From Octopus sinensis (lineage: Eukaryota), in contig NC_042997.1 of NCBI RefSeq assembly GCF_006345805.1, positions 23,312,001 through 23,376,000 on the forward strand: DNA of 64,000 nt. Direction: 5' to 3'. The translations under genes were made by a program, and so were the position numbers. Shown here in pieces: positions 156-63,614 of the stretch. Each line of letters starts with the position of its first letter. Position 1 is the first letter of the stretch. The notes beneath the pieces were generated by a model. The model saw nothing but the letters and a program-made list of their open reading frames with translations, had not been told where the DNA came from and did no database searches.

Positions 156-217
156 CATGACACAAGAGGTCTGAATAACCAAAGGTTGGACAGTAAAACA
201 CGAGGTATGAAAGGCAA
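156..217 (-). CDS. PM20D1: PM20D1-like paralog A, coding exon 7 (62 nt); gene continues beyond the left edge
   Basis: TTTTAAACAG / GTGAG boundaries. Encodes LPFIPRVLLSNLWLFRPLVS(W); 57/62 nt identical to 63553-63614. Confidence 0.93.
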
Positions 218-1912
218 CTGTTTAAAATAAAATAAAAATAAAATGATAAAATTACATTAATCTTGATACATTCAATCACTAAATTTCACACTATTTATTT
301 ATCTTTTTATCAAGAGATTTATTTATTTTTATCTTTTTATCACAAGAGACTTTTTCCACAGCCTCTGAGAATGGTAGCAGGGAGGGAGAGAAGAAGGTAT
401 CCTCAAACCATAGATTTGGCCTGAATGCTTACATGAGGGTGGATGCTGCTAAAGTTAACCAGAGTAATACCTTCCTTTTGTACAGAAACATAAAATTAAT
501 ATATCGTCAATCTCTAAGTGGTGACCTAGCAGAATCATTGACATGCTGGGCAAAACGCTTAGTGGTATTTCATTTGTCTTTACACCCTCAGTTCAAATTC
601 TGCCGAGGTCAACTTTGCCTTTCATCCTACCAGGGTCAATAAAACAAGTACCATTGACTTACCCTATCCCCTGAAATTGCTGGACTTGTGCGAAAATTTG
701 AAACCAATACATTGTCAATATAAAACCATAATCATTATATTTAACTGATAGTTACTGTTAGTCTTGACATTTTGTTGCCTTAAAAGTCCTTTCTTTCATA
801 ATACACTAAAACAAAATTGTCACTGCTGAATAATTATGTCATTCATTGCAAAGCCATTAAAATAACCGGGTGCCACATAAAAAGCACCAAGAATACTCTG
901 TAAAGTGATTGGTGTCAGGAAAGGCATCCAGCTGTAGAAACCAAGTCAAAGCAGACTATGGAACCTGGTGCAGCCCTAACCTTGCCAGTTCCTGTCAAGC
1001 CATCCCACCCATGCTAGCATGGAAATGGATTATGCTGATGATTATAATGATTAACTAGTTAGTTAAGTTTAATGTCTATTTTACTATGATTTGAGAGCTG
1101 ACCAGATGTATAGTATTACTCCTTTATATTCATTTTCTGAAATCCTTTTTGAGTTGTTCAAATTCTTATGCTACTATACACTATATCAAACCAACAAACT
1201 AAATTCAATTTAGTTTTCATATAGAAGAAAATCTCTCTTCTATCAGTAAGGTTTATCAATTCTCTGTCTTTTAACCTAACTGTTATGATATTTTCTCAGT
1301 TAAATTGAATCACAAGACCTTTGTGTTTCTTTTTTCTGTTCTACATGCTATGTAAGTAGAATGCATAAATATCTTATATTATAATAGGGAGGGAAAAAAG
1401 GGGAGGAATCAAAATATACACCGCAATGTATTTTTAGAAGAGGAGGAGAAAATATTGTTGTTGGGAGAGAAATAATGTTTGTGTGTGCATGAGAGAATGT
1501 GTGTGACAGATAGATAGATAGATAGTGTTTCCACCATTGTCTGTCTCCACCACAAAATTTATTAGAGAGAAGGAGAAAGGGAGGAGAAGTTGTTGTTGAG
1601 AGAGAGAAAGAAGAAGAGAGAGAGACAGTGTGTGTGAAAGATAAATACATAGATAGGTTGGAACTGTCACCAGAGTAACTAACAAATTTTGGTTAACAAC
1701 ATGGGAATTTTAAATACAAGTCAATACAATGGAACACAAACTTCAAAAAATGATTATATGAATATATATGATATCATCATTATCATTGTTGTTAATGTCT
1801 GCCTTCCATGTTGGCATGGGTGGGATTCATTCATATATTTATTTTCATATGTGTGTCCATGTGTGTTTGTATGTCTTTCAACATATAGACAAGGAAACAG
1901 ATTTCAAAGAAG

Positions 1913-1950
<38 letters not shown>

Positions 1951-2338
1951 GAGGTATAATCTTCTTATCTTATCTTTTCTTATCTTATATTCTGTTCACC
2001 AAGAAAGTCAGTCTAAACATGATTCACACAATTTATGAATGTATATGCATGATTTGCAAATATTTTCATCTGGTTATTGAGTAACAGGTTTGAACTAGCT
2101 TTCTATAATTGTCATATTATGAGTGATAGAAATTGTGGTATATATCTCAGAGACCTTAATGTATTCATAGTTCCCAAAACTCATTTCCATTACTGGATGT
2201 AATACTTAGTTATGCTTATATATATATTAACTACAGTTCTCCCTTCTCATTCTGACACGTAAGAGAACTGGGAGCTTAAACCTTGTCAAAAAAAAAAAAA
2301 AATAGAGGAAGCAGCAAATAGAACCTTAAAAATCTTAC

Positions 2339-2414
2339 CTTGGGTGCAAGATGTTCAAAACTAGCTCTTTCTGCACCAGTACCAAACATATCGGGTTGTG
2401 GGTTTGATTCAATG
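2339..2414 (-). CDS. PM20D1: PM20D1-like paralog A, coding exon 6 (76 nt)
   Basis: TTTATAG / GTAAGA boundaries. Encodes (N)IESNPQPDMFGTGAERASFEHLAPK; phase fits both neighbours. Confidence 0.92.
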
Positions 2415-4029
2415 CTATAAACAATATTGTTTATATATATACAAAAAGCAAATTACTTTGAAATTAACAAATTGATATTAATATCAATAAAAGCAGAAAT
2501 ATTAAATTACTGGTATAAAGGCCTTACAGTATTTTGGGCATGTTCTTCCTGTATGTTTTGGTTATATAATAACAATGATGATGATATTGTTAATGGTAGT
2601 GGTGGTGATGATGATGATGATGGTAATGGTAGTGGTAAAGATGATGATAATGAGCTTATTGTATAATAGAATATTGATGAGCTTATGTGCATGTTACTGT
2701 GTTAAAATATGCAACTGACTTTAAGTTGTACTTTAAGATAAAAGGAACAGATGCTATATGCTATGTATAGATCTTTACTGTAATCTGACCTGGACATAAT
2801 ACAGTAACAGATTGCTGACTGGCAACTCAAGTTGGTCAGGCACTACTGTACATTTTAGGAGGAAAAACTTGGAATTTACCAACTTAAAAAGTTTGTTGGT
2901 GAATGTGACTGAGGCATTATTGACAATAGTGATCTGCGATGGATGAACATTTCTAAAATCATCAAAAATTAGTAATATTTACTGTTGTTAAGCACCAAAT
3001 CATGTATTATCAAAAAGATCTGCAATCAAAGGAGTTCCAGTAATGACTTTTTATATAGCTATGGCAATACTATCTAATGTGTCCTTTCTTTTTTAAGATG
3101 GTAGAATGCTTTTAAGAAAGATTTGGGTGTTCTTTCTAGCATATCATAAAGTTGTACAGAGGCTCCCTTGTTGGCTTGTATTTTTTTCTGCTGCACCCAT
3201 AAGTGGGCTACAATGTAAAATAATCTGTTTATAGCAATATGGACAGCTGGTTTAATTGGCATCAAATATTTTTGCCATAGTTACTTTGTGCAGTGACAAC
3301 AATGGAATATAAGCAATCAATTCTTCGGTTGGTTGAGCAACCCTCCCTCTACTTCTCATGCACTGATAAACATGACTGTATTGCTTATAGAATGTATAGT
3401 AGGGAAGACACTCTTTACTTTTCTCAGATAATCTTAAGTGTCAATGACATAAGAAAATGTACCCTGTCTAATCTGTGAAGTGATTGGTGATAGAAAGAGG
3501 ATTCATTTGTAAAAAAAAAAAATCATGCTAAAGAATGACAAATGCAACAAAGATGAGTAATTTTTGCTATTGTTCAATGTATGAAATGCAGTAACATATT
3601 GATAAGATGCTGTGTTGGGACAGACTTGTCCAAACCACATGGAAAAACAAATGTAAAATGATGAAGATAATGCTGCTGCTGATGATGGCGATGGTAGTCA
3701 TAATGGTGGTGACGGTAGTCATAATGGCGGTGATGCTGTTGTCATGGTGATAGTAGTGATTATAAATAACAATCAATTATGATTAACAAATCCAGGTCCA
3801 AGTATTATTAAAGTGGGGACGATTATGTATTGCCATCACACAATTCACAATAACAAAGCAGAGGAGGGACTAATAAAAGAATGTAATATGCATGCACGCA
3901 CACACACACAAACATCAAAACTATTTTCATACAAGGATGCCCCCCCCCTCCAACCTCATCATTTTGAAGGCTGTGGTTTAAAAATAAAATGGGGATTTTC
4001 CCCACAAATTTCTTTAAGAAAGGGATTTG

Positions 4030-4399
4030 GGATCTTTTCAATTTGAACAGCAGTTTTTTCTAGTGGTGTCATATGAAATTGTCACCCATAATTATGACCC
4101 TAGTATCGATCTGTTTTAGGGTTAGGATTAAGGGTGGGGGTGAAGGGTATCTTTTTTTCTTCACAAACGTAAATAAACCCAATCTGTTTCTTAAACGAGG
4201 GACATATTCATACAGCACAGAATGTTTTTACCTCAATGGACGTCACTGATTGGTTGAAATTGCAGAAAAAATAGAATTTTCTCAATAAAGCCAAGAGAAA
4301 AAGATGTTTTATACAGACATTCTACCAGTACACGAAGTTTAAAATTTTTTAGTTACCTAGAAATTATGTTAAAAACTGCTGTTCAAACCAAAAAGATCT
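4030..4399. mobile_element. MITE with TIRs and 8-bp TSD (hAT-like), inserted in an older foldback arm
   Basis: GGATCTTTT..TTGAACAGCAGTTTTT / AAAAACTGCTGTTCAA..AAAAGATCT. GGGATTTG flanks both sides (4022-4029 and 4400-4407). Confidence 0.75.
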
Positions 4400-5054
4400 G
4401 GGATTTGTATAAATTTTCATTGAAAGATACCCATTTACCTGAAAGTTATGAGAGAAAAAGGTCAGATCGTGTGAATTTTCCAAGACTCCTCTCTCCAACT
4501 CCTTGGAAAAATTATTTCCCATAAATCCCTATATACTTTGAAGCCACCACATCTAAGCGGTATTTGTAGAAAACTTTGTGAAAAATATCCATTTTTCTGA
4601 ATGTTATGAGGCAACAAAGTCGGGGCATATACATCTGTAGTAATGCCCTTTTATTTATACAATTTTTTCATTTCATGTTTATTTCATTCCTTGTTTGTAA
4701 TGTTCTCTCCCTCTCTCTCTCTCTCTCTCTCTTTCACACACACACAGACTGCAAAGATTACAGATGGGCTGCAGAAATGTAATCTCTATGTTGCTTTGAG
4801 GAGAAGGTAAAACTTGACAAATTGCTTCTCCCTCTATTGTTGGACTACCGTGATGTTTGTTTAAAAGAGAGAGATTATGACTGTGATAAAATAATGAAAG
4901 TAATATTTACTAAGCAAGTGAGCACTATTATACAAAGAAATAATTAAACATAAAATATAAAAATCATTAAAATTGGGTATCAAATGTAAAAATATTATCA
5001 AGGGGCAAGCAGAAAACCGCCCGGAGGGTGGTCTTTCTGCTAGTATATATATAT

Positions 5055-5960
5055 ATATATATCATCATCATCATTGTTTCATGTCCACTTTCCATGCTGG
5101 CATGGGTTGGACTGTTTGACTGACGACTGGCGAACCAGAAGGCTGCACCAGGCTCCAATCTGATCTGGCAAAGTTTCTACAGCTGGATGCCCTTCCTAAT
5201 GCAAACCACTCTAAGAGTGTATAGGGTGCTTTTACATGCCACTGGCATGAGGGCCAGTCAGTCAGTACTGGCAATGACCATGCTCAAAAGGGGTTTTGTA
5301 TGTGCCACATGCACGGGACCCAGTCCGGCGACACCGCAACAATGATGCTTGAATGTTGTTTTCACATGCCACCAGCACATGTGCCAGTAAGGTGACACTG
5401 GAAACAATCATGCTCAAATAGTACTTTTTACGTGCCACCAGCACGGGAGCCAGTCAGCGGCCCTGGCACCGATCACACTCAGATGGCGCTTTTCACATTC
5501 CACTAGTACAAGTGCCAATCAGGTGGTACTGTCATTGGCCACATCAGCGATTTTGTTTTCACTTGCCTCAACAGGTTTTTGCAAGCAAAGTTTATTGTCC
5601 AATGAATGAAGGGTATCATAAATGGGCTGGTTATACACCACTGGCATAGGCCACAGCATATCTCCAAAGGTCTCGGACACTAGTCATGACTGTTCGTACA
5701 TGTGTCATACAGACTACATTTTACTCTGAGCGAGAGGCCCTTTGTCACTAGCAGAGGTAAGAGCTCTCTGAACTTTGCCCAAGCTATTCTTATTCTAGCA
5801 GCTACACTTCCAGAGCATCCACTCCTGCTACTGACTTGGTCACCTAGATAATGGAAGCTATCAACTACTTGTAGCTTTTCTTCCTGGAATGTGACAGAAG
5901 CTGTTCTCTGCAGATTTTCAGTGTTCATTGCTCCTGAGCATTTGCCACATACAAAAACTA
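5055..5960 (-). mobile_element. 5'-truncated RTE LINE (RT C-terminus + 3' UTR + (GAT)n tail)
   Basis: LQVVDSFHYLGDQVSS..SVAARIRIAWAKFRELLPLLVTKGLSL in ORF 5680-5928. Family 3' end ...CCAACCCATGCCAGCATGGAAAGTGGACATGAAACAATGATGATG. Confidence 0.85.
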
Positions 5961-6539
5961 TCTTCCCAGTTAGCCTTCCTTTGATATTGCTGCACCTCTT
6001 ATGTGTTCCATAGCTTACACTGGGTACATCTTATGTAGTTTCTATGTACGCCTTTTCTACAGGGCCATCTTCCTGAAGGGATTTGTGGTTTGTCTGCCTT
6101 CCTACTAATTAAGACTTTGGTTTTAGCTAGGTTGACTCTAAGGCCCATTGATTCTAATTCTTTCTTCTACACCTGAAACTTCTCAAGTTCTGATAGTAGA
6201 AAAACAAAACAATAAATTGAAAAATCATAAATTCAATTTAAATATTTTATACAAATGACACATCCCATCAATTACAACTGTTTCTGCTTCATGAATAAAA
6301 TGAAGTTTTTCAAGAATAACCAAATCTATTTAAATATGTAATGATGCTTCATCAGATTAACTATTTGACAAAAAATATCAAATAAAAATATTTATAATTT
6401 CGAAATCTTTACAAAGGTGTTATGTGAACAAGCTTAATCACAAATAAGCAAATAATCTAACTGAAATTTTGTAAATTCATAACTTTAAATCTATAACTAT
6501 TCTGTTCTATAATCGGTTTATGCATACACATTATTTATA

Positions 6540-6960
6540 TCATCATCATCATTGTTTAATGTCTATTTTCCATACTAACATAGGTTGGGCGGTTTGACCG
6601 GGGTCTGGGAAGCCAGGAGGCTGCACCAGACTCCAGTCTGATCTGCCAGCCTTTCTACAGCTGGATACCCTTCCTAATGCCAACCACTCCATGAGTGTAG
6701 TGGATGCTTCTTATGTGCCACCGGCATGGAAGCCAGTCAAGGCGGCACTGGATGGTGCTTTATACGTGCCACCAGCATGGGTATCACAACTAAAATGTTC
6801 ATTTGATTTTTATTTTGATGTTGATGTACTTGACTCAATAGGTCTCCTCAAGCACAGCAGGTCGCCCTACAATCCAAAGTACATTTGAATGAGCTGGGGT
6901 TGGTTATGCGAAACTGGTGTAGGATACAGCCATGAACTCACTTAATTTGCCAGGTCTTCA
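6540..6960 (-). mobile_element. RTE-family 3' end (UTR + tail)
   Basis: (CAT)n followed by the conserved CTACAGCTGGATACCCTTCCTAATGCCAACCACTCC block. Confidence 0.8.
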
Positions 6961-7069
6961 CAGTCACTGGGTGAACCTTGCTCTGCCTCTTCTCTTGTTA
7001 GTGTTAAACCATGTGATCACTTCGTTGGTGTTGCACCACAGGAAAATGTTGGTGGCCCTCCTTATGTTG
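6960..7069 (-). mobile_element. Unique continuation of the PLE RT fragment downstream of the array
   Basis: ORF 6964-7224 continues NNIRRATNIFLWCNTNEVITWFN...RARFTQ*, then joins an RTE 3' end. Confidence 0.7.
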
Positions 7070-9368
7070 TTACTGATATTTCTCAATATGTGCTTGCTTG
7101 CCAGACCAATCTCAGATTTGGCTGGATTGATCAAGCAGCATTTAGGGTTTGAGGCAAAATTCTGTTTATGATCTTTTATGGTAATGAAGGCGATTCTTTT
7201 AGCTAGGATCTCTACCCTATCCACTATCTCTAGTTTGTTACCTAATTCTTTGGCTTCACTGTTGATGTCATTATGTGTGAGGGAAGTATGACTATAATTT
7301 TGTGTGACATTATTTTCTAGTGGTCTATTATAATCTAAGGTGTCTATCCTATATAAGTTTTGCAGTGCTTCTTTTAGATTTATGTTTTTTTACAAATGAT
7401 ATATATAATATAAAAGACTTTCTCACTTTTCTGCATGCCAAACTAATACACCTTACTGATATTTCTCAATATGTGCTTGCTTGCCAGACCAATCTCAGAT
7501 TTGGCTGGATTGATCAAGCAGCATTTAGGGTTTGAGGCAAAATTCTGTTTATGATCTTTTATGGTAATGAAGGCGATTCTTTTAGCTAGGATCTCTACCC
7601 TATCCACTATCTCTAGTTTGTTACCTAATTCTTTGGCTTCACTGTTGATGTCATTATGTGTGAGGGAAGTATGACTATAATTTTGTGTGACATTATTTTC
7701 TAGTGGTCTATTATAATCTAAGGTGTCTATCCTATATAAGTTTTGCAGTGCTTCTTTTAGATTTATGTTTTTTTACAAATGATATATATAATATAAAAGA
7801 CTTTCTCACTTTTCTGCATGCCAAACTAATACACCTTACTGATATTTCTCAATATGTGCTTGCTTGCCAGACCAATCTCAGATTTGGCTGGATTGATCAA
7901 GCAGCATTTAGGGTTTGAGGCAAAATTCTGTTTATGATCTTTTATGGTAATGAAGGCGATTCTTTTAGCTAGGATCTCTACCCTATCCACTATCTCTAGT
8001 TTGTTACCTAATTCTTTGGCTTCACTGTTGATGTCATTATGTGTGAGGGAAGTATGACTATAATTTTGTGTGACATTATTTTCTAGTGGTCTATTATAAT
8101 CTAAGGTGTCTATCCTATATAAGTTTTGCAGTGCTTCTTTTAGATTTATGTTTTTTTACAAATGATATATATAATATAAAAGACTTTCTCACTTTTCTGC
8201 ATGCCAAACTAATACACCTTACTGATATTTCTCAATATGTGCTTGCTTGCCAGACCAATCTCAGATTTGGCTGGATTGATCAAGCAGCATTTAGGGTTTG
8301 AGGCAAAATTCTGTTTATGATCTTTTATGGTAATGAAGGCGATTCTTTTAGCTAGGATCTCTACCCTATCCACTATCTCTAGTTTGTTACCTAATTCTTT
8401 GGCTTCACTGTTGATGTCATTATGTGTGAGGGAAGTATGACTATAATTTTGTGTGACATTATTTTCTAGTGGTCTATTATAATCTAAGGTGTCTATCCTA
8501 TATAAGTTTTGCAGTGCTTCTTTTAGATTTATGTTTTTTTACAAATGATATATATAATATAAAAGACTTTCTCACTTTTCTGCATGCCAAACTAATACAC
8601 CTTACTGATATTTCTCAATATGTGCTTGCTTGCCAGACCAATCTCAGATTTGGCTGGATTGATCAAGCAGCATTTAGGGTTTGAGGCAAAATTCTGTTTA
8701 TGATCTTTTATGGTAATGAAGGCGATTCTTTTAGCTAGGATCTCTACCCTATCCACTATCTCTAGTTTGTTACCTAATTCTTTGGCTTCACTGTTGATGT
8801 CATTATGTGTGAGGGAAGTATGACTATAATTTTGTGTGACATTATTTTCTAGTGGTCTATTATAATCTAAGGTGTCTATCCTATATAAGTTTTGCAGTGC
8901 TTCTTTTAGATTTATGTTTTTTTACAAATGATATATATAATATAAAAGACTTTCTCACTTTTCTGCATGCCAAACTAATACACCTTACTGATATTTCTCA
9001 ATATGTGCTTGCTTGCCAGACCAATCTCAGATTTGGCTGGATTGATCAAGCAGCATTTAGGGTTTGAGGCAAAATTCTGTTTATGATCTTTTATGGTAAT
9101 GAAGGCGATTCTTTTAGCTAGGATCTCTACCCTATCCACTATCTCTAGTTTGTTACCTAATTCTTTGGCTTCACTGTTGATGTCATTATGTGTGAGGGAA
9201 GTATGACTATAATTTTGTGTGACATTATTTTCTAGTGGTCTATTATAATCTAAGGTGTCTATCCTATATAAGTTTTGCAGTGCTTCTTTTAGATTTATGT
9301 TTTTTTACAAATGATATATATAATATAAAAGACTTTCTCACTTTTCTGCATGCCAAACTAATACACCT
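7070..9368 (-). repeat. Tandem array of 6.0 x 383 bp, derived from the N-terminal RT region of a Penelope-like element
   Basis: Units start at 7071, 7454, 7837, 8220, 8603 and 8986, with no differences seen by eye. Each unit's minus strand reads ...QNLYRIDTLDYNRPLENNVTQNY...DINSEAKELGNKLEIVDRVEILAKRIAFITIKDHKQNFASNPKCCLINPAKSEIGLASKHIL. Confidence 0.95.
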
Positions 9369-9977
9369 GCTTGTTGTTCATACACCTGTCTTCGTCTATT
9401 GTTTTTCTATAAATTTTAACTATACACCAGTCCAACCCATGCTAGCATGGAAAGCGGACGTTAAACGATGATGATGATGACAAGTGTAAGTCAAAAATTA
9501 TATGCACTCTTGTTTCTGTAATTTATCAAAACAAAAGCAGGGGTTAAATAATTACATTATTTTATCATTTTTCAACATAGTCACCTTGCTCTCTGATGCA
9601 CTTCTACTAGCAGTCCACAAGCTTGCATATTCTATCAGAGAAGGTTTTTCGGCTGGTCACACAAGCATTTATACACCACCTCCTGTGCTTCTTTGTCTGT
9701 AGTTAATCAATAACCTTATAATGAATGTTTGAGAGCTCAAAAAAAGGGACAGTCACAAGAGGCAAAATCTGAACAGCATGTAGGATGTACAATTCATCCA
9801 ACAGGCTTTTATGAAATTTCAATATACCCAGTTTTACTCACAAGTTTTAGATCAACTCAAAGCCATAGAATACAATATTTGTCCAAGATGCCATACAGTG
9901 GGGTTTCCTCAGGAACCTTGTACTTCTGAAGCAAACTTCTTCATCATTAAAACAAAGTATATATGTAAGTTACTTAC

Positions 9978-10097
9978 TTGCATATTGCAGCAGACAAAAT
10001 GCCAATGACAGATTCAGTTGGAGGAGCTGATGAGTGACCAGCTGTTCCATTGACAGAAAGTTTCACAGTTGCTTGACCCTTTTCAACAACACCAATC
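9978..10097 (-). CDS. PM20D1: PM20D1-like paralog A, coding exon 5 (120 nt)
   Basis: TTTTGTAG / GTAAGT boundaries. Encodes [39 protein letters not shown] (EKG and GHSS motifs). Confidence 0.95.
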
Positions 10098-10649
10098 CTA
10101 CAAAACCAAGTGAAAATATTCAATGATTAGATCAGAAAAAAAGCATATCTCTTGAAAATTCGATGTAAAGATTTGAAAATTTTTTTAAACAAGAACTCCA
10201 AAACTTGTAAAATTATATACATGCTTCCATGTACAGAATTTAACCACAAATGATTTGCTAAAGTTCTCAAATATATCCTGAAATGGTTGCAGTATCAGAT
10301 TAATTCCATATTTTGTTTTTATTTTTCACTGATTTCAGTCATTAGATTGCAGCCGTGAAGAATTTTAGTCGAACAACTTCAACCCCAAAACAAGATGTAT
10401 GCTCAGTCAAGTCAGATTGTATCAACTGGGTGAATCTTGAACAACAAGCAGGTGTATTAGTTTGGCGTGCAGAAAAGCAACTTACCACACAACCACTCGG
10501 AGGAATAGTATTAGTTATACTGTTCCATATTTGCGAATATTACTCTATTATAGGTCTGAGTTGTGTTTTGTAAAGGTTCAGGAATTCAAGCATTTGCAGT
10601 GATTTTGAAGGTTTTTATTTGCAAGTTATTTGTGATGAAATAGGGTAAG

Positions 10650-49085: not shown

Positions 49086-49229
49086 TTAACGTCTGTTTTC
49101 CGCGCTAGCACGGGTTGGACGGTTTCGACCGGGGAGCTAGGGACTGCCCCAGGCTCCAGTCTGGTCTGGCAGTGTTTCTACAGCTGGATGCCCTTCCTAA
49201 CGCCAACCACTCCGCGAGTGTAGTGGGTG

Positions 49230-49262
<33 letters not shown>

Positions 49263-52789: not shown

Positions 52790-54092
52790 CTGCAAATGGA
52801 AAATGTATAATAAACTATTTTTTAATAATAATAATAATAATAACTCATGTAATTAAGTTAATCATTATTATCACAGTTCATTAGTATTCTACTTTAATGG
52901 TTCTAGTTAGCACCAATCTTCATAATATTAATAGCTTTCAACATGATAAAGTATAAATTTTCAGTGGAACACAAATATTTCAATAACTAGGACATAACCA
53001 GCTAAGAATAACTTTCTTTGCAGCATTTTTCCTGAAAAACACATCTCTAATTGCTTCCAATATCACCCAGCATACACTCAACAAAAGTACTCCTAAATAC
53101 TGTATAGAATAAGCTTATTAAAAAGCTATTATAAGCTATTATAAGCTCCCATCTCTACTATGCACATATATGAGGTCGCCCAGTACAAAAAGATCCTCCA
53201 TTTATTCCTGTGAAAGTATTTTAACTCCAAGAATTACATAACATCCTATTATATAACATCTCATGTTATATAACTTTTCATAAATCTCTACCTCTTATTT
53301 CGCCGAGGTCTACTTAGTCTTTCATCCTTTCCAGATCGATAAATTAAGTGCTGTTGAGCACAGGAGTCAATGTAATCTACTTACCCTAAACCCTAAAAAA
53401 ATTGCTGCTTTCTTGCTAAAATTTGAAACTATATATTTCTACCTCTTATACGATCAGTATTTACTTTCTCGGCATCACTAGAAACGGGCAGCTTAAGCTA
53501 AGGGCAACAACTCTTGCTGACTTTGCTGATATTTCCTAGACTACTTAGGCTCCTCTTCTCAAGTTTTCGCACGAGGCAGTTCAAATTGAACTCCATGTAC
53601 CACGTGTCAATAGGGCAATGTCGAAAAAATGAAAATCTCAAACATTCTAATGCTCGAAATTTCAAAAGTTTTCAAGTGATGTTACATACATAGAATAAAC
53701 ACAAACAGTGGTTATTAGTTTGGTAAGTCTCTCAAAATATGAGAAAGCTTCTACCTGTATTAGACAGTCTGAAATCTGCTCACGATCTCTGACTCATTCT
53801 ATATTAACTTCCTTGTTGATCATCATTTCTTTCATTCTTGCTACATCAACTCTGAGATGGTGATCACTAACAAGATTCGATAAAAATTTTAAAGTCACTA
53901 CAAGTGATGAGTTTTTACCAAGCACTTCTGGAAACCTGGCCAGTTGAAATATCTATGTCACAGCAGCTACTAGGACACCAGCAACAGCCACTTCACTGAG
54001 TGTAAGAGTCTTGAATGCTAATGGACTCTTTATTACATGGTCCAGTTATCTGATGACGAACATACTGGAGCCATCTTGTTCATATTATCTCC

Positions 54093-54275
54093 AGGCATAG
54101 AAGTGGATGTGTGGGAAGTAGCTTGCTTACAAACCACATGGTTCCGGGTTCAGTTCCACTGCATCTTGGGCTGCAGTCCCACTGCATCTTCTACTATAGC
54201 CTCAGGCCGACCAAAGCCTTGTGAGTGGATTTGGTAGACGGAGGCTGAAAGAAGCCCGTCGTATATATGTATGTG

Positions 54276-54319
<44 letters not shown>

Positions 54320-54526
54320 GTGTCTGTGTTTGTCCCCCCAACATCGCTTGACAACCAATGCTGGTGTGTTTACGTCCCTGCAACTTAGTGGTTCGGCAAA
54401 AGAGACCAATAGAATAAGTACTAGGCTTACAAAGAACAAGTCCTGGGGTTGATTTGCTCGACTAAAGGCGGTGCTCCAGCATGGCCACAGTAAAATGACT
54501 GAAACAAGTTAAAGAGTAAAAGAGTA
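54093..54526 (+). mobile_element. tRNA-derived SINE (same family)
   Basis: Full-length match. Confidence 0.9.
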
Positions 54527-56046
54527 ACAAATATGATAAATCACCCTGCGAAGATCCATCTTACAAACTGGCAGTATAGTAGATAATATTCAAATTTGAA
54601 GATTTTTTTTCTAAGATTGGAAATGATGTAGATATTTTCTTAGATTTTAATTTAATAATGCTTTGTTTCAAACATCATCCTTACTTTAGGTGTTTTCTTG
54701 TATTGTTCATACTACAAACATCAAATGATACATCTGGACAAGTATGTAAATAATCTGACCTGGAAAATTTTTTATTCAGATTTCTCATCTCTACTTAACA
54801 CACTATTCCTAGGAAACCTGCCTTTCCTTACTTCTATTGGAGATATTGATGATATCATTTATCTTTTACTTGTTTCAGTCATTAGATTGTGGCCATGCTG
54901 GGGTAACTGCCTTGAGGAATTTTAGTCAAACTAATCAATCCCAGTATTTCTTTTCTTTCAAGCCTTGCAGAACCATGCCATCTTTTAAAGTTTTGTCATT
55001 TATAATAGATCTGGTTACCAGCACCAAAATCTTCATCAGCATTAATCCTCATTTTAGACCAGGGGTGGAAAACATACAATCCAAGGGCTAGATTCAGTCT
55101 ATAGTGATGTTTTGTCTTGCTCCCAGTACAATTTTATAAAATAAAATAAATTTTTTAAATACTTTTTTAAATTTTAAAGTTGAAGTCCTGCTAGAATCAT
55201 GATTATCACTAATTCCAGTTAATCAAGTCAGTGCATATGAATTTACATGCTAAAAGAGGAGACCTATTCCCCCACCTTTACTTTGTCTACTCATGCTGAT
55301 CCAAACAGAAGTTTTGTCTCTTAAAATTTATTCAAGTGTTTGTTCAAATGGTTTCTTATAATATGGATGACGCTGAAAAATTTTGTGGCTGAAACAGTGA
55401 AAACTTTCTATCAAGTATTGATCTTCTCAAGAGTTGTACACATTCATTTAGATAATTTCTGTCTCCACTCTCACAATAGTACTTTTACTTAATAAGACTG
55501 TGTATATGATGTCTGAGTGAGTTTTCCCCACACATCTCTGCACACAAATTTTGCTAACATCTCATATTCTTTCTTTCCTTGTTATACTGTATAATGACTC
55601 CTTTATCTATTTACATGTCTTACATTAAGAATGGGGATTATAGGAATGATTATCTCTATGCAGACCACTAAATCTAGTTTATGCCTCAGTCCAGCTAACA
55701 AAGCCAATCAAATTTGACACCCCTACTTTAGATCTCACTGCTCTTTTTATTTTTTCACTTGCTTCAGCCTCTTTGAAACTCTTTCATGCTGTATGAAGAA
55801 CATTTAAATTATCCTAGATATGTCAGTAGCTGTTATAGATTCCAAAGTAGGTAACTGGTCAGTCAGAAGTGAAAGCTAAATACAATATTTAAGCCAAATA
55901 CAAATTCATTTGAACTACGACCCAAATAATTTTTGAGTGCATTTTTTATACTAATAGCTCATGCCATGGTAATATCTGGTTTATATTTCTCTTCTGATAC
56001 TTTCTGTGCTACTTCTGCCACTATCAAGTCATGAAACTCCACTGTA

Positions 56047-57327
56047 TCTGTATATATATATAATATATATATATATATAAGGCAAGATGTGTGTGTGTAC
56101 GTGATTGTAGTTTATGTACATCCACAAATTAGCACACACGTCGCTCAGATTTTAGGAGGACATTCGTCACGACCCTAGCTGTATTTTCATCAAACTATTT
56201 TCCCCCGAGGCACCCGCGAATAGTGGTAAATAATTTTGAGCCATAACTTCTAAATTTTTATGGCGGAGAAACACACCATTGTTTACAAAGCAAACATGAG
56301 TTAAGTCCCCTCCTAGTGACAGTGTAAAGAGAGGGAGGGAGAGGAAGAGAGAGAGAGAGAGAGAGATAACAGATTTTTAAAATTTCGTCTTTTTACAGGC
56401 AAAAACAGACAGACAGGCATTGTTATGTATGTATGTATGTGCGAATGGCTTCAGTCAGACATACACACACACGAGCATGTATGCATACAAAACACATGTA
56501 TGCAATGTGTGTGTGTGTGTTGCCCGTATATATATATATCTATATATATATATACACAATATAAATGATATTCTCCGTTTCTCCACAACTAATTTCCAAA
56601 TTAGCTGAATCCGTTGCTCTACTCATAGTGATATATAGCTGGTCGTGTGTGAACATGGGAGAGAGCTGAGGTTACCAGAGCAAAAGACCTACATGTTGAT
56701 TGTAGACACGCTCCTTCGCAAACGATCAGCTATTATTTTGTAAACAATGTATCGAAACTGTTCATGTTTTCAAAAGGAGAGATATGACTTTCACATCTCT
56801 GCAGGAGAAGGTAGGCTTCTCTATTCCTGTTACAAAACTTACTTCCAGGTGCCAAATTTGCTTTGGTGGTGGTGGTGGGACAGTGGCAGGGGCAAAAGCA
56901 TGCAGAAACATGTATGCAATAGGTGTATGTACATATGTTTGTGTGTGTGTGTTGCCCATATATATATTATATATATATATATATTATACATAGTTGTGAT
57001 CTGAACATAACTGCTTCTCACACAGAGGATCGGGGGCCCTTTTGGGCGTTCTATTTTCCTTGCTGGAAGGGTTCTCAACCCATGGGCAAGTGGGGTTACA
57101 TGAAAAAAAAAACGCAAAACAATCGATGAGTGGAAAAATTCGATAAACCAATTCCTTATGGGATTTCTCAATCAAATTGTCTGCAAAATTGCAGCCAAAA
57201 GTTTACCAATTTCAATGGATTTCACTCAAATTTGACATCAATGTTACTTAGTTTGCTTTGAAATAAAGAGCTTGATTAGCTTAATAATCCTAACTTAATC
57301 CCGAGCAAAGCCAGGCTATACTGCTAG
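56047..57327 (+). mobile_element. Non-autonomous Helitron
   Basis: A|TCTGTATATA..GGCAAGATGTG ... GAGCAAAGCCAGGCTATACTGCTAG|T. Internal blocks are homologous to 33263-34327. Confidence 0.8.
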
Positions 57328-57790
57328 TCATTACTAAATGGACTGTCCGTAACTGTAGTACAGGTTTTAACGTTTAGCTTCTTGTTCATCTGCCTGTAGT
57401 AATCATAGTAAAATTTACTCCCTGTTTTCACTCTAAAAAATAACCCAGAGTTCCAAAATAAGACATCCACATGATGTGATTGTTTATATTTAAAATGACA
57501 TTGTAGAGTAGGTGTGAGAAACTAGATCTGGCTGTTTTGAACTTAAAACAGGTGGAATATTTTGGCTGGATATGGCCAGTTTAAATGCTAAAGGGTTTAA
57601 CCCTGTTCTAAAATAATTTGTAGTTCACACAAAAACTGAAAGAAAAAAACTACTTCAAAATAATTGTTTCTTTTTTTAATTAAATAAAATTGGAATATCA
57701 TTTTATTTTTTCTCTCTGGGTAAAATCAAATTTAAGGTAGTCAAGTGGATTACTCAGTAACTGTTTATAAAATTTAAATGTAATAATTAC

Positions 57791-57862
57791 CTGTTCAAGT
57801 GTCTGTGAAGGATGGATGCGGTAATCAATTACAGCTTCAGCTGATTCAGAAAGCACATTATC
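57791..57862 (-). CDS. PM20D1: PM20D1-like paralog B, 72-nt exon
   Basis: GTTTTAAG / GTAATT boundaries. Encodes DNVLSESAEAVIDYRIHPSQTLEQ (cf. NVIP...VNFRIHPGQT). Confidence 0.94.
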
Positions 57863-58163
57863 CTTAAAACAAAGTAAATATAAGTTGTATAAAAAAATAT
57901 TATAAAACAATAACTCAAAACCAAAACAATGGATAGGAATCTAAATGGAAAGAATTGAGGATAAACACAAATGTAATTATATTTATATACATTACCACCT
58001 GTGTCTTCTTTTATCTATCATTGTTAGAGGAAGATATTGCATTGAGCTTGAGTTTATTATTGTATATGTGGTATTAAACTATCAAGGAACACTTCTTTTC
58101 TTGCATAAGATAGCAATTTATTGAGAATTTTTTTTCGTGCAAGCTAACAAAGTTTGCATCAAA

Positions 58164-58554
58164 TCTCTCTATATATATAAAGCTGAAGTTGTCTGTGTAT
58201 GGCAGGTTTGCTAGCCTTCAACTAACACTATCTCCTCTGAGACCCTGCGGTGCAAGTTGACCAAAATTGAGAGTATGATAGAAGGCTTGCTCTTCCTTCC
58301 GTAGAAGAAAAATTCAAATCAGACCATGTTAACACCAAAAATTATTTACATCAAAAAGGTGCTTTTTTTCTATGAAAATCCCTATTTTTTTACGATTTTT
58401 TGACTGCTGTGTTGCCATTTTTCGGTGTATTTCAACCAGAAAAATGTTCACTTAAAGAGAATAACAAGCTGCATGATGCAAAATTTTAACTTTTCAAAAA
58501 TTCCAATTCTAAAGGGTCGAAACAAACCCAAGCAATGACAGGCGATACTGCTAG
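58164..58554 (+). mobile_element. Non-autonomous Helitron
   Basis: A|TCTCTCTATATATATAAAGCTG ... GCAATGACAGGCGATACTGCTAG|T. Its 5' 150 bp also occur inverted at 29730-29880. Confidence 0.8.
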
Positions 58555-59429
58555 TATATGATACAAGCTTTGTCAGCTTGCATGTGTTAACTTGCCCCTG
58601 GCCCCAAGATGACTGTTTAACCTTCTAGGAACAGCAGCCAATTCTCTCTCATATTATACCAGTGACCTTAAAAAGGTTGGGGTGGGGATCATTATATTTT
58701 TTTAAATGGTATTGTCACAGTTGGAATGCCTTTGATCACAGGTTTGTTCAATCGAAGTTATAAGTAGAGGAATTAAATATCTTCTCTGAGAACACAATAC
58801 AGCATCAGTGATGAGATACGAACCACTAACTTTTTAACTAGTAGTAGACTGACTGCTAGTAGTCAATGTATATTATCTGTACTCCAGTAAAACACATAAA
58901 AGTCACAAAAATCTCAATGGCTATCTATATGCAAAACTAACAAGTATTTTTATCAGCTAACTATTTACATGAGCACAAACATTTATTTATACAATAATTT
59001 AACTGTAAGTCACCAGTAAAAAACTAAAATGAAAAACAAACAAAAACCATCCATTGACAGTGTTTTGTAGGTCCAAAGAAGACTTGTTACACAAACATGT
59101 AAAATATACAGATCTACGAAAAAATAATAAAGCAAACATATCCTGTCCTCGCAAACATGAAATAAAACAATTCCAAATTAAATTTTAAATAAAAGTGGTA
59201 TGGCAGACCAAAAAGAATTGTGGATATTGAGAACAGAATATCTAATTCACAAATTGTTTGCCTTTTCAAACAATTTACCAAAATATATCATAATTCTGAT
59301 TTATTTTCAAAATTTTAATCATTTTTACATCCACTCTTTTAGAGTGTTTCTAAATATTCAGATATTGAAATGACTTATTCTCTTATATGTTTCAGTCCAA
59401 TGACCGTGGCCATGCTGGAGCACCGCCAT

Positions 59430-59630
59430 TGTAACTATCTTTCCACTTTCCACCTTTGTCGGAGCGGCTTCTGGTGAAGGATGGCATTCGATGCTACTGC
59501 CCTTTTTTGAGTTTCTTGCTTAGATATTGGCTCATCCGGGATCTCGGCGAACCAGAGGTCAAGTTCGCCTTTGAAAACGTCTACATCCACTCCACTTATT
59601 GAGGTCAAATATTTCATTGTATTGTTAAAC
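59430..59630 (-). mobile_element. LINE 3' ORF2 fragment
   Basis: VDVFKGELDLWFAEIPDEP...RAVASNAILHQ resembles CR1/L2-type ORF2 C-termini. Confidence 0.55.
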
Positions 59631-59809
59631 TTCCCTTTCTAATTATGGCTATATCCAGTCATTCAATGAATTCAGTATCAATTTTTCAGCAGATCAAGTC
59701 AGATATGTAAAAAGATATACATTTTTTTTATCTAACTCATGAACTTTGATCTAACAGTTCATTATCTTAAATATTCACCAGTTATGTTGTAAAATCAAAA
59801 ATAACTATT

Positions 59810-60160
59810 TAGCTTTTATCTCTTGTCTCAGTAATTGGACAGCAGCCATGCTGGGGCACTGTCTTGAAGGGTTTTAGTTGAACAGATCAACCCTAGTAGT
59901 CCAGTAGAGTCAGTCAGGTACTTATTCAATCAGTCTGTTTTTGCTGAATCACTAATCTGTGAGGATGTAAACAAACCAGCATCGTTTGTCGAAAGATGGT
60001 TGGGAACAAAGACACATACACACAGATATAGTCACCGTCTACCAAATCCACTCACAAGGCTTTGGTTGGCTTGGGGCTAGAGTAAAAGACACTTGCCTAA
60101 GATGTCAAGCAATGGTACTGAATCTAGAATCATGTAGCTGGAAAACAAATTTCTAACCAT
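59810..60160 (-). mobile_element. Older diverged SINE copy
   Basis: GCCATGCTGGGGCAC..., CTACCAAATCCACTCACAAGGCTTTGG. Confidence 0.75.
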
Positions 60161-60684
60161 AAAACCACAAAAAAATAAATTCTTAAAATAATAATAATAA
60201 TAAAATTATTGTGTATAGCGCTCAGGTGCACTACAACTCATCAAAGGTGCATGTGCAGTACACAGAATTATGTATAAAAGTCAGGAAAGCGAACAGTCTA
60301 TGAGTCGTGATATACGTGTGTGCATGCATATGGAGGGAGGATATCAGGTGTAGTGTTGGCGAATTTCAGGAAGCACGGAGGTTTTAAAGAACCCAATGTT
60401 TTTTGTTTGGTTTTGTTTAATCTTTTTTATGTCTCTAAATAAATATAAAATTTCCTTCATTCTCCTTTGACAGAAATTTAACGGAGAAAAGAAACCGAGC
60501 TTAATTACCAAGTTAGAACAGAGTTATCTCCCATACTGACGCAATGCAACATCGATGTAGTTTATATTTCAACATGCTAGAAATAGTAGCCAAATCTCCT
60601 GGAAAATCACATCTAATTGTCTTGATAAGGCAGTCTAGGAAAAAAAATTATGGAATGGTCATGGCAGAAAAGTTTTTTATCACT

Positions 60685-60960
60685 GTGTTAATTGACTATC
60701 GTCAAAAGGGCTACACCATCAGTGGAGAGAACTATGCCAGCTTGCTGAGGCAGTTATGAAAGATTATCAAGATCAAATGCCCGGGAAAACTGATGAAAGG
60801 TTCATCAGGACGATGCTCCAACACACAGTCTTTGGTTTCAATGGCCTCAGTGCATGACTGTAGCTTTGAACTGGCTAATCACCCTCCCTATTTTCCTGAT
60901 TTGGCCCCGTCTGACTATCATCCGTTACCCAACACGAAAAACATTTGGCTGAGAATCAGT
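60685..60960 (+). mobile_element. mariner (DD34D) transposase fragment
   Basis: LIDYRQKGYTISGENYASLLRQL and HPPYFPDLAPSDYH. Confidence 0.8.
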
Positions 60961-62331
60961 GTCACGGTGAATAATTGTGAATAATTAAGTATCAGAGGTG
61001 GCACCCACCAAGCAGAAACCTTTATCATGCCAATTCATTATTCAGAATATTCTTAACTCACAAGATATGCTAATAGTATTGACTATTTGATTTATTATCA
61101 GTCACCATCCCTCACCATGTGGTGAATATGATCAATGTTTTCCTTGGTGGTGGCATTTGTAGGACATCCAAACCTTGAGTCATGTTGAAGATTCTCCCTT
61201 CCCCTCCCAAATTCAACTACCCAGTTTTACAATGTTGATAAAACTGGAGCATCATCCTATAATGTAGCAACTATGTCAACATAATTGTCCTTGAGAGCTA
61301 AAGCATTTTTTGCAGGTACATGATAACGCCACGATGCCAAATTTTGTCCATTTTCAAGAGAAGTAGCTGCAAGTTACTTGGTTATTTTTGAAGTCCTGGG
61401 AATAAACGGCAACATCTGGCTTCTCGTTAATAGCAATAGCAGTTAACGGGCGAAAGTCATAAATCTTAGTTACGTCCCTTTACGTTGTGAGTGTAGATTC
61501 CATCTAGGTGACGTTTTCCTCTATTTTCCAGAGTTTGATTATTGTAGCCTTGAATCTATGTTAGAAAAAATTCATTATTATGAGAACGATTAGTATTGGG
61601 AAATAAAAGATTATTATTAGCATGATGGAGTGATACAATATTTTGTGGTATTTAATGACATTACTTTGCGTTCTGAACTGAAATTCCCACCATAGTCAAT
61701 TTTTGCCTTTCATCCTACTACAGTTAATAAAAATGAATCAATTTTATTATCACCTAAAATTTTTGGTCTTTAGAAACCGTGATTAACATTGTGACATAGG
61801 CAAAGACAGGCTTTCTATCAAATAAACTCTGTTGATTTCTCTGGTGGATACATGGCTTTGTGGACTCACTTAAGACTAAACAAAAACTGACAGGTTGTCT
61901 TAAAACCTGTAACTAGATAGTTTTATCTCCCAGAACATTATCACATACACCCTGGTCCAACGTCATAACTCATAAATGTGCCAATGTGATAATTTAATCT
62001 GTTAAAAAGTATAGCAAATCTTCCTCAAATTACACATGGCCTTTAAAAATTGGGAAAGAAAATGGGATAATCATAGTTCAAATGTATTTCAATCATAGGT
62101 TTGTTTGATTGAGGTTGATCTGGGAAAAAACAAGACAAATTTTACTCAGTTGATTTTTGTGAACTTGGTAACCAATTCATCACATCATATGAATGTCTTT
62201 CCCTTCCTGATTATGATCTAGAATCAATAAAAGAAGTACAAATAATATCTTAATTAGCTGTTTTAATTAACTTTAAAATATTCTATATCATTGTAGTTCA
62301 TATCAAAAGAAAAAGTTACCAAAATATTTAC

Positions 62332-62410
62332 CTTAATTCCAGCATCAAACCTGGTTACAGCATTTACAGTCCTGATAAGAGCATTTGTTGTTGGTTGGCG
62401 AGACAAAACC
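62332..62410 (-). CDS. PM20D1: PM20D1-like paralog B, 79-nt exon
   Basis: CCTTTAAG / GTAAAT boundaries. Encodes VLSRQPTTNALIRTVNAVTRFDAGIK. Confidence 0.94.
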
Positions 62411-62559
62411 CTTAAAGGCAAATAAAATTCAGACATTAAATAAGTAGGTTCAAGTAGTCAGCTATTATTTCATCAATGTCTAGTGAGCTATTTCTTTTTT
62501 ACTCATGAAATTTTCTTATGCAATATGAAATTGTAATAAAATTAATTACTATTCACAGA

Positions 62560-63095
62560 TTGCAATGTCAGTGTGTATGTACAACATAGTGTAAACATCT
62601 TGAGAGAAAAATTGGGCATAACAAGCATCAGATGTGGTGTGCAAGAGAGAAGATTGCACTGATATGGTCATGAGATGTGTATGGATGAGGACAGCAGCAT
62701 AAAAAAGTGCTGATCTCTAACTGTGGAGGGAACCTGTGGAAGAGGTAGTCTCAAGAGGACATGGAACAAGGTGGTGAAGCATGGTCTTTAAATGTTGGGT
62801 CTCATAGAAGCGATGATAGGTTATCAAGACCTTTGGTGATTTGCTGTGCTTGAGAAGACTCATCAAGCCAAGTGAAATTGTAGTCATGGACAGTGTCAGT
62901 GATATGTAAAAAGCACTAGTGCCAGTGACACACGAACAGCATTTATGCTGGTGACATATAAAATGTACCCACTACACTCTTAGAGTGGTTGGTGTTACAA
63001 TGGGCATCCAGCTGTAGAAACCAAGCCAAAATCAGTTCTAGTCAAACCATCTAACTCATGCCAGTACGGAAAATGGATGCTAAATGATGATGATG
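62560..63095 (+). mobile_element. 5'-truncated RTE LINE (same family)
   Basis: Homologous to 16300-16845, ending ...GGAAAATGGATGCTAAATGATGATGATG. Confidence 0.8.
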
Positions 63096-63342
63096 GAGAT
63101 ATTTTCAAGTATAATAAAACCATATACTTAAAAATAACTGACTGAAATATAATCAAATTGTGAATAATAAAGTGATTAAATAAATGTGTAAATATCTAAG
63201 TCTTTTGTACAATTGTTATTTTATTGTGTTAGTTTTGTTCTTCATGTAAAAAATAGAAACCAAATAGTCAACAATAGAATTACAAATACCCTTAACGTAA
63301 TCTTAATATGTGACTGGAAATAATTAATAGATACTAATGACT

Positions 63343-63390
63343 AAAATACAATGTTAGAAAATACAATGTTAGAAAATACAATGTTAGAAA
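63343..63390. repeat. 15-bp tandem repeat x3
   Basis: AAAATACAATGTTAG x3. Confidence 0.85.
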
Positions 63391-63552
63391 AAGAGAGGAA
63401 AACTTATCTGTAAGATTCATTAAAAAGATAATAGTTTTTGTAAACTAAGATGAAAAACATTATTTTCTGAAGCCAATTTTGTTTCATAGTACAATGGAAA
63501 ATAAAATAGTATACAACTTAATTCCAGTACATAACAGGTTTGGAAAACTTAC

Positions 63553-63614
63553 CATGACACAAGAGGTCTGAATAACCAAAGATTGGACAGAAACATACGA
63601 GGTAGGAAAGGCAA
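63553..63614 (-). CDS. PM20D1: PM20D1-like paralog B, 62-nt exon (homolog of A exon 7); upstream exons lie beyond the right edge
   Basis: AACAG / GTAAGT boundaries. Encodes LPFLPRMFLSNLWLFRPLVS(W). Confidence 0.93.

What the first reader, a model, noticed from the sequence alone, without database searches (positions are those of the whole stretch)
156..63614. Tandem PM20D1 paralogs with a period of about 63.4 kb
Seen: the 3' half of one PM20D1 (B, 63614-35319) lies 9.4 kb upstream of the 5' half of a second (A, 25922-156). The same 62-nt exon occurs at 156-217 and 63553-63614 with 57/62 identity. All metal-ligand motifs visible in either copy are intact. Known: PM20D1 makes and hydrolyses N-fatty-acyl amino acids and is normally single-copy in mammals. 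Inference: a lineage-specific expanded lipid-amide signalling or detoxification enzyme cluster in a cephalopod, possibly with more copies flanking the window.
Basis: partly seen in the sequence, partly recalled or inferred. Interest (0 to 1): 0.7.

Follow-up and report, generated by a model that had tools for sequence, protein, structure and literature searches.

The report
Two adjacent octopus PM20D1 genes
The window holds the back half of one and the front half of another of two neighbouring, intact PM20D1-type lipid-amide enzyme genes of Octopus sinensis; the pair arose by a duplication within the octopus lineage, is already annotated in public databases, and is an ordinary two-gene tandem duplicate rather than an expanded cluster.

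Summary
On the minus strand, exons 7-11 of gene B (63614-35319, TAA stop) lie 9,396 bp upstream of exons 1-7 of gene A (25922-156). Exon 7 occurs twice at 57/62 identity, with flanking intron conserved (87.8% over 344 nt).

The window is Octopus sinensis chromosome CM016859.1. A is XP_029638959.1 (PM20D1.2) and B is XP_036369005.1 (PM20D1.2-like). Both are 505 aa, with 11 coding exons of identical lengths.

There are only two copies, flanked by a RING/NHL gene and a GlcNAc-2-epimerase gene. O. bimaculoides has the same four-gene order. Argonauta hians has one copy within its 34-kb locus.

Ks dates the duplication after the Argonauta split and before the O. sinensis/O. bimaculoides split: A-B 0.30, orthologs 0.06-0.10, Octopus-Argonauta about 1.1. 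Introns are still alignable between A and B (7.2 kb at 82%), so it was a DNA-level segmental duplication. It is not a haplotype artefact.

Both copies keep all 61 residues conserved across metazoan PM20D1, including the metal ligands. Ka/Ks rose after duplication (0.42-0.84, against 0.16 to Argonauta).

"Expanded cluster" and "more copies flanking" are refuted. The 63.4-kb "period" holds for exon 7 only. Both genes were already annotated; interest is low.

The parts
35319..63614 (-). 3' part of gene B (XP_036369005.1, PM20D1.2-like): coding exons 7-11 at 63614-63553, 62410-62332, 57862-57791, 52789-52624 and 35545-35319 (TAA). An AATAAA lies at 35287. Exons 1-6 lie beyond the window's right end.
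   Evidence: Spliced translation is 100% identical to P0003 residues 305-505. Window 25319-64000 equals L001 87313-48632 at 100%. Exon chain; poly(A) signal.
156..25922 (-). 5' part of gene A (XP_029638959.1, PM20D1.2): coding exons 1-7 at 25922-25658 (ATG), 17809-17577, 13177-13091, 12287-12157, 10097-9978, 2414-2339 and 217-156. Exons 8-11 lie about 0.6-9.3 kb beyond the window's left end.
   Evidence: Spliced translation is 100% identical to P0123 residues 1-324. The full gene was mapped in L002.
156..217 (-). Exon 7 of gene A (LPFIPRVLLSNLWLFRPLVSW). This is the only exon present for both genes in the window.
   Evidence: 57/62 nt identical to 63553-63614. The flanking intron is also conserved.
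63553..63614 (-). Exon 7 of gene B (LPFLPRMFLSNLWLFRPLVSW).
25923..35318 (.). 9,396-bp spacer between B's stop and A's start codon. It contains a GC-rich reverse-transcriptase fragment (28022-29727, minus strand) and SINE-like repeats. A's promoter is presumed to lie here but has not been mapped.
40478..43598 (+). LINE-type retrotransposon (AP-endonuclease plus reverse transcriptase, split into three ORFs) inside B's 17-kb intron 10. It is part of the reason B is twice as long as A.
   Evidence: Pfam Exo_endo_phos_2 at 4.5e-8 and RVT_1 at 2.8e-26. GC is 0.52-0.54.

Best explanation
The window covers the junction of a two-gene, head-to-tail tandem duplicate of the PM20D1-type M20 metallopeptidase gene on Octopus sinensis chromosome CM016859.1. 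A DNA-level segmental duplication copied the whole 11-exon gene, introns included. It happened in the octopus lineage after the split from Argonauta and before the split of O. sinensis/vulgaris from O. bimaculoides. Transposon insertions have since inflated the introns unequally, so B now spans 67 kb and A 35 kb. Both copies remain intact and keep every conserved catalytic and metal-binding residue. By inference from mammalian PM20D1, each most likely encodes a secreted or membrane-anchored, metal-dependent enzyme that condenses fatty acids with amino acids into N-acyl amino acids and hydrolyses them again. After duplication, constraint outside the catalytic core relaxed to about the same degree in both copies. 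That fits either mild sub-functionalisation or partial redundancy. Shown here: gene structure, identity, synteny, timing, integrity and selection pattern. Inferred: enzymatic activity, secretion, and any division of labour.
For: Identity: the A N-terminal half is 100% identical to P0123 and the B C-terminal half is 100% identical to P0003; RefSeq names and accessions come. Locus maps read RING/NHL | B | 9.4 kb | A | GlcNAc-2-epimerase in O. sinensis, with the same order in O. bimaculoides. Argonauta has a single copy with no second copy within 10 kb on either side. All five genes have 11 coding exons with the same lengths, apart from a 3-nt-shorter last exon in the O. bimaculoides A ortholog. 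Timing: Ks is 0.30 for A-B, 0.06-0.10 for orthologs and about 1.1 to Argonauta. The A and B clades each have 100% bootstrap support. Introns align collinearly between A and B (7.2 kb at 82%), whereas only exons align to Argonauta. Integrity: Pfam finds Peptidase_M20 plus M20_dimer in both. All 61 columns that are at least 95% conserved in 99 metazoan PM20D1 proteins are unchanged in both O. sinensis copies, including mouse-numbered H125, D127, D157, E191, E192, D218, E219 and H465. That none of the A-B differences falls in those columns has hypergeometric P = 2e-8. Paralog Ka/Ks is 0.42-0.46, significantly below 1 (p about 1e-8). Fixed derived changes are symmetric, 23 in A against 24 in B. 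Both N-termini are hydrophobic. PM20D1 enzymology: PMC6055169, PMC7145423.
Against: No expression or activity data were available here. No exact-match transcript contigs for either O. sinensis protein turned up in the assemblies searched. Since the species split, B's Ka/Ks is 0.84 and cannot be distinguished from neutral (p = 0.56), so weak constraint on B cannot be excluded. The NJ protein tree places Argonauta with the B clade at 64% bootstrap. Taken at face value that would mean an older duplication followed by loss in Argonauta, but Ks and the intron homology contradict it.
Confidence: 0.9

Rival explanations
1. The two copies are alternative haplotypes or an assembly duplication of one gene.
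For: Only one exon is visibly shared inside the window. A perfect 383-bp x6 array at 7070-9368 shows that this assembly contains suspiciously exact repeats.
Against: A and B differ at 24% of residues, with Ks 0.30, and their introns are only 82% identical where alignable. The independent O. bimaculoides assembly has the same two genes, each with a closer ortholog. The O. vulgaris annotation fuses the same two genes into one 938-aa model.
Confidence: 0.01
2. One copy, most likely B, is functionally redundant and drifting toward pseudogenisation, so the pair is a transient duplicate rather than a functional expansion.
For: Ka/Ks between the O. sinensis and O. bimaculoides B orthologs is 0.84 and does not differ from 1 (p = 0.56). 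Ka/Ks of both copies is 2-5 times higher than on the deep Octopus-Argonauta comparison. B's introns are heavily loaded with transposons.
Against: B has an uninterrupted 505-aa ORF with canonical splice sites in two species. Only 1 of about 50 B-ortholog differences falls in the 61 conserved columns (P = 0.01). RefSeq lists several B isoforms. Derived changes are symmetric between A and B.
Confidence: 0.08
3. The duplication is older than the Octopus-Argonauta split, and Argonauta lost copy A; or it is part of a wider cephalopod or molluscan expansion.
For: The NJ tree groups Argonauta with the B clade, though at only 64% bootstrap. Many non-mammalian animals carry more than one PM20D1 gene: teleost PM20D1.1/.2, and several in Branchiostoma and Leptobrachium.
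Against: Ks for A-B (0.30) is about 3.6 times smaller than Ks of either copy to Argonauta (about 1.1), and Ka to Argonauta is equal for A and B at 0.185 and 0.184. Paralog introns are still alignable, whereas Octopus-Argonauta introns are not. Other molluscs each contribute a single lineage in the tree. Post-duplication gene conversion could mimic a low Ks, but same-species and cross-species A-B Ks values are equal (0.28-0.31), which argues against conversion after the species split.
Confidence: 0.07

Closest known systems
Mammalian PM20D1 (secreted N-fatty-acyl amino acid synthase/hydrolase; MEROPS family M20)
   Same: Peptidase_M20 plus M20_dimer architecture, about 505 aa, a hydrophobic N-terminus, and about 49% identity to mouse PM20D1 over 84% of the A N-terminal-half query. 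All family-invariant residues are retained, including H125, D127 and H465 in mouse numbering.
   Different: Two tandem copies instead of one. No biochemical data exist for any mollusc. The physiological setting known from mammals (brown-fat uncoupling, nociception) need not apply.
Teleost pm20d1.1 / pm20d1.2 and the multiple PM20D1 genes of amphioxus and some frogs
   Same: Independent lineage-specific duplications of the same gene family. RefSeq even borrows the '.1/.2' names for the octopus genes.
   Different: The octopus pair is not orthologous to the fish pair. It arose within octopods (Ks 0.30) and groups as a cephalopod-only clade.
Aminoacylase-1 (ACY1, PDB 1q7l) and bacterial DapE/ArgE M20 enzymes
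   Same: The same fold family and di-metal site. ACY1 also hydrolyses N-acyl amino acids. These are the closest solved structures by sequence.
   Different: Only distant, partial similarity (E = 1e-18 over residues 56-231), compared with E around 1e-71 to 1e-100 for non-cephalopod metazoan PM20D1 proteins. The octopus genes are not members of those subfamilies.

Membership tests
PM20D1 subfamily of M20 metallopeptidases | Peptidase_M20 catalytic domain with an inserted M20_dimer domain | tested here: met
   Pfam PF01546 scores 1.5e-30 (A) and 2.6e-29 (B). PF07687 scores 1e-13 (A) and 1.3e-10 (B).
PM20D1 subfamily of M20 metallopeptidases | Di-metal ligands and catalytic residues (His, Asp, Asp, Glu-Glu, Asp/Glu, His) intact | tested here: met
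   All 61 columns at least 95% conserved in 99 metazoan PM20D1 proteins are unchanged in both O. sinensis copies, including mouse-numbered H125, D127, D157, E191, E192, D218, E219 and H465. The assignment of these residues as ligands rests on general M20 knowledge.
PM20D1 subfamily of M20 metallopeptidases | Closest relatives are PM20D1 proteins rather than other M20 subfamilies | tested here: met
   The named hits among the top 120 carry PM20D1 or generic M20 names (many others are unnamed or hypothetical), and none is named for another M20 subfamily; they reach 41-89% identity and include mouse PM20D1. The cephalopod clade sits among the metazoan PM20D1 sequences, which were the only sequences in the tree. 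The nearest non-PM20D1 solved structure reaches only E = 1e-18.
PM20D1 subfamily of M20 metallopeptidases | N-terminal signal sequence (secreted enzyme) | tested here: inconclusive
   Both proteins start with an 18-residue hydrophobic stretch (mean Kyte-Doolittle hydropathy 2.5-2.65 over 19 residues). Whether it is a cleaved signal peptide or a signal anchor was not determined.
PM20D1 subfamily of M20 metallopeptidases | [quoted passage not shown] | not testable with these tools
   Requires recombinant enzyme assays. The activity is known only for mammalian PM20D1 (PMC6055169, PMC7145423).
Tandem segmental gene duplicate | Two complete copies, adjacent, in the same orientation | tested here: met
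   B then A on the same strand, 9.4 kb apart, each with 11 coding exons and a 505-aa ORF.
Tandem segmental gene duplicate | Homology extends collinearly into introns (a DNA-level duplication, not a retrocopy) | tested here: met
   18 collinear HSPs covering 7.2 kb at 82% between A and B. In the window, 123-464 vs 63520-63863 is 87.8% identical.
Tandem segmental gene duplicate | Reproduced in independent assemblies and species (not an assembly artefact) | tested here: met
   O. bimaculoides has the same four-gene order. The O. vulgaris gene model fuses both genes.
   The flanking genes are a RING/NHL protein and a GlcNAc-2-epimerase. tblastn finds no further PM20D1 exons in the 10-kb flanks.

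The most novel reading that the evidence does not exclude
After an octopus-specific duplication, the two PM20D1 enzymes diverged in substrate preference or tissue of expression (for example digestive or salivary gland versus nervous system or skin). This would give octopuses a two-enzyme system for making and clearing N-acyl amino acid lipid signals. The raised Ka/Ks outside an untouched catalytic core would then reflect adaptive tuning of the substrate-binding surfaces rather than relaxed constraint.
Probability: 0.12. Interest if true: 0.45.

Novelty: already known. Interest (0 to 1): 0.15.

Why it matters
It matters little beyond bookkeeping. Both genes already carry RefSeq accessions and PM20D1 names in two Octopus species, and lineage-specific PM20D1 duplicates are common outside mammals.

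This check adds four things:
- Timing: the duplication falls between the Argonauta split and the O. sinensis/O. bimaculoides split.
- Copy number: the locus holds exactly two copies.
- Integrity: both copies keep an intact catalytic core while the rest of the protein evolves faster.
- An annotation error: the O. vulgaris model fuses the two genes.

N-acyl amino acid biology in molluscs is unexplored, so the pair is a reasonable but unremarkable candidate for anyone studying lipid-amide signalling in cephalopods.

Tried and rejected
1. A first protein search with a chimera of short exon peptides gave only two fragmentary hits. It was useful for exon finding but not for identification.
2. I used an approximate human PM20D1 sequence recalled from memory as a tblastn probe to locate the small exons. 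It served only as a lead; every exon was later confirmed against database proteins.
3. My first splice mapper failed on gene A because intron 8 has a GC donor. Allowing GC donors fixed it.
4. The haplotype/mis-assembly reading was rejected on divergence and cross-species synteny.
5. The expanded-cluster reading was rejected on the flanking genes.
6. Recent gene conversion between A and B was considered because kilobase-scale intron identity reaches 87-89%. Same-species and cross-species A-B Ks values are equal, so there is no sign of conversion after the species split.
7. Asymmetric acceleration of one copy was rejected: 23 vs 24 fixed derived changes.
8. Two transcript-derived cephalopod homologs (P0006, P0007) were looked up to see whether decapodiforms also have two copies. 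They come from different run sets whose species were not given, so this was uninformative.
9. tRNA and Rfam scans of the window found nothing.
10. A literature search for PM20D1 with octopus found nothing relevant.
Full report
**Observation**

The repeated exon is real. On the minus strand, 217-156 and 63614-63553 share 57 of 62 bases. Self-BLAST shows the similarity runs into the flanking introns: 123-464 vs 63520-63863 is 87.8% identical over 344 nt, bit score 429.

I located the remaining exons with two fragmentary homologs and an approximate, memory-based human probe. I then joined them at canonical AG/GT sites.

- Gene A: E1 25922-25658 (starts with ATG), E2 17809-17577, E3 13177-13091, E4 12287-12157, E5 10097-9978, E6 2414-2339, E7 217-156.
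- Gene B: E7 63614-63553, E8 62410-62332, E9 57862-57791, E10 52789-52624, E11 35545-35319 (ends in TAA). An AATAAA lies 32 nt downstream of the stop.

The spacer from B's stop to A's ATG is 9,396 bp.

**Identity**

A search with the 324-aa N-terminal half of A returned metazoan PM20D1 proteins, with Octopus at the top. The C-terminal half of B is 100% identical to residues 305-505 of P0003 (XP_036369005.1, "PM20D1.2-like isoform X1", Octopus sinensis). The N-terminal half of A is 100% identical to residues 1-324 of P0123 (XP_029638959.1, "PM20D1.2", O. sinensis).

Window 25319-64000 matches the O. sinensis chromosome record CM016859.1 (GCA_006345805.1) at 100% identity. The window is therefore O. 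sinensis, and both genes already carry RefSeq annotations.

**Locus**

| Species | Upstream gene | B span | Spacer | A span | Downstream gene |
|---|---|---|---|---|---|
| O. sinensis | 660-aa RING/NHL | 67.3 kb | 9.4 kb | 35.2 kb | GlcNAc-2-epimerase (opposite strand) |
| O. bimaculoides | RING/NHL | 39.4 kb | 5.3 kb | 26.8 kb | GlcNAc-2-epimerase |

- tblastn finds no further PM20D1 exons in any flank. This is a pair, not an expanded cluster.
- The O. vulgaris annotation contains a 938-aa model that is a fusion of B and A. This confirms adjacency there, and the fusion is probably an annotation error.
- Argonauta hians has one 14.3-kb gene and nothing else within 10 kb on either side.

**Gene structure**

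I mapped each protein exactly onto its genomic locus. All five genes have 11 coding exons of lengths 265/233/87/131/120/76/62/79/72/166/227. The only exception is a 3-nt shorter last exon in the O. bimaculoides A ortholog.

Intron sizes differ greatly. B's introns 1 and 10 are 20.5 kb and 17.1 kb, against 7.8 kb and 4.1 kb in A. The "63.4-kb period" is therefore true only for exon 7: start-to-start distance is 76.7 kb and stop-to-stop is 44.6 kb.

Part of the inflation is visible in the window:
- a LINE (AP-endonuclease plus RT) at 40478-43598 inside B's intron 10;
- a gag-like DUF7041 ORF at 45586-46281;
- several SINE-like repeats.

**Timing and mode of the duplication**

Nei-Gojobori estimates:

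| Comparison | Ks | Ka/Ks |
|---|---|---|
| A vs B, in either species or across species | 0.28-0.31 | 0.42-0.47 |
| A orthologs, O. sinensis vs O. bimaculoides | 0.10 | 0.62 |
| B orthologs, O. sinensis vs O. bimaculoides | 0.06 | 0.84 |
| Either copy vs Argonauta | about 1.1 | 0.15-0.18 |

- Ka to Argonauta is the same for A and B (0.185 and 0.184).
- An NJ tree gives 100% bootstrap support to the A clade and to the B clade, each holding O. bimaculoides, O. vulgaris and O. sinensis sequences. It also gives 100% to octopods as a whole. Argonauta's position relative to A and B is unresolved (64% with B).
- Collinear blastn chains align 7.2 kb at 82% between A and B, mostly intron. Orthologs align over 63-72% of the shorter gene at about 90%. 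Octopus and Argonauta align over exons only.

Together these results place an intron-containing, DNA-level tandem duplication after the Argonauta split and before the O. sinensis/O. bimaculoides split. They also exclude a haplotype artefact.

**Integrity and selection**

- Both proteins have Peptidase_M20 plus M20_dimer domains.
- In an alignment with 99 full-length metazoan PM20D1 proteins, 61 columns are at least 95% conserved. All 61 are unchanged in both O. sinensis copies. These include mouse-numbered H125, D127, D157, E191, E192, D218, E219 and H465, which correspond to the M20 di-metal and catalytic residues. That assignment rests on general M20 knowledge.
- The chance that none of the roughly 120 A-B differences falls in those columns is 2e-8. 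For the A ortholog differences it is 1e-4, and for the B ortholog differences (one hit) it is 0.01.
- Paralog Ka/Ks is 0.42-0.46, significantly below 1 (p about 1e-8).
- Since the species split, Ka/Ks is 0.62 for A (p = 0.03) and 0.84 for B (p = 0.56). The deep comparison to Argonauta gives 0.16.
- Fixed derived amino-acid changes are symmetric: 23 on the A lineage and 24 on the B lineage.

The pattern is a strictly conserved catalytic core with faster evolution elsewhere in both copies. This is typical of retained duplicates under partly relaxed constraint. It does not single out one copy as neo-functionalised.

**Likely mechanism**

[quoted passage not shown] Three features make the same chemistry the best-supported function for the octopus enzymes:
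- about 49% identity to mouse PM20D1;
- complete conservation of the active site;
- a hydrophobic N-terminus, mean hydropathy above 2 over 19 residues.

This is an inference; nothing here tests activity, secretion or expression. The closest solved structures by sequence are aminoacylase-1 and DapE-type enzymes, at much weaker scores.

**What is known, and novelty**

Both genes are annotated in RefSeq in two Octopus species. Lineage-specific PM20D1 duplicates are commonplace outside mammals: teleost .1/.2 genes, and several genes in amphioxus and Leptobrachium. I found no paper discussing PM20D1 in cephalopods.

The finding is a correct reading of an ordinary, already-annotated tandem duplicate. 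This check adds the dating, the two-copy limit, the selection pattern and the O. vulgaris fusion error.

**Verdict**

Interest is low.

Noticed in passing
window 7070-9368 (intron 5 of gene A): Six head-to-tail copies of a 383-bp unit at 100% identity, with no indels (TRF score 4598). The array is absent from paralog B, from the O. bimaculoides ortholog and from Argonauta. It is either a very recent amplification or an assembly/polishing artefact. The unit carries a 109-aa minus-strand ORF with no Pfam hit.
   Followed up: partly
window 40478-43598 (+), inside intron 10 of gene B: GC-rich (0.52-0.54) LINE-type retrotransposon with AP-endonuclease and reverse-transcriptase domains, split over three ORFs of 386, 284 and 256 aa. 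It is probably a slightly degraded copy.
   Followed up: partly
window 28022-29727 (-), in the A-B spacer: GC-rich block with strong GC skew that encodes a 329-aa ORF with a weak RVT_1 match (YIDD motif). It is followed by a 160-aa ORF with no Pfam hit, which from memory resembles the GIY-YIG end of Penelope-like elements. That resemblance was not verified.
   Followed up: partly
window 45586-46281 (+): A 231-aa ORF matching DUF7041 (E = 1.3e-11), with a Ser/Arg-rich tail. It looks like the gag-like part of a retroelement inside B's intron 10.
   Followed up: no
window 20393-20754, 26888-27298, 32465-32866, 43771-44165, 54099-54521, 59804-60168: A dispersed repeat family of about 400 bp (SINE/MITE-like), present in both orientations at 83-93% identity, in introns of both genes and in the spacer. 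More copies occur in the flanking loci of both Octopus species.
   Followed up: no
L002 36428/36429 (intron 8 of gene A, about 0.6 kb left of the window start): Gene A uses a GC rather than a GT donor at intron 8. The O. bimaculoides ortholog and paralog B use GT there.
   Followed up: no
P0129 (CAI9714838.1, Octopus vulgaris): A 938-aa gene model that joins B (residues 1-473) to A (from its residue 39 onward). This is most likely an annotation fusion of the two tandem genes rather than a real read-through product.
   Followed up: partly
window 21478-21989, 31469-31969, 23280-23665: Long imperfect palindromes (self-inverted matches of 400-540 nt at 70-80% identity) in A's intron 1 and in the spacer. 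These may be foldback-type or MITE-like elements.
   Followed up: no
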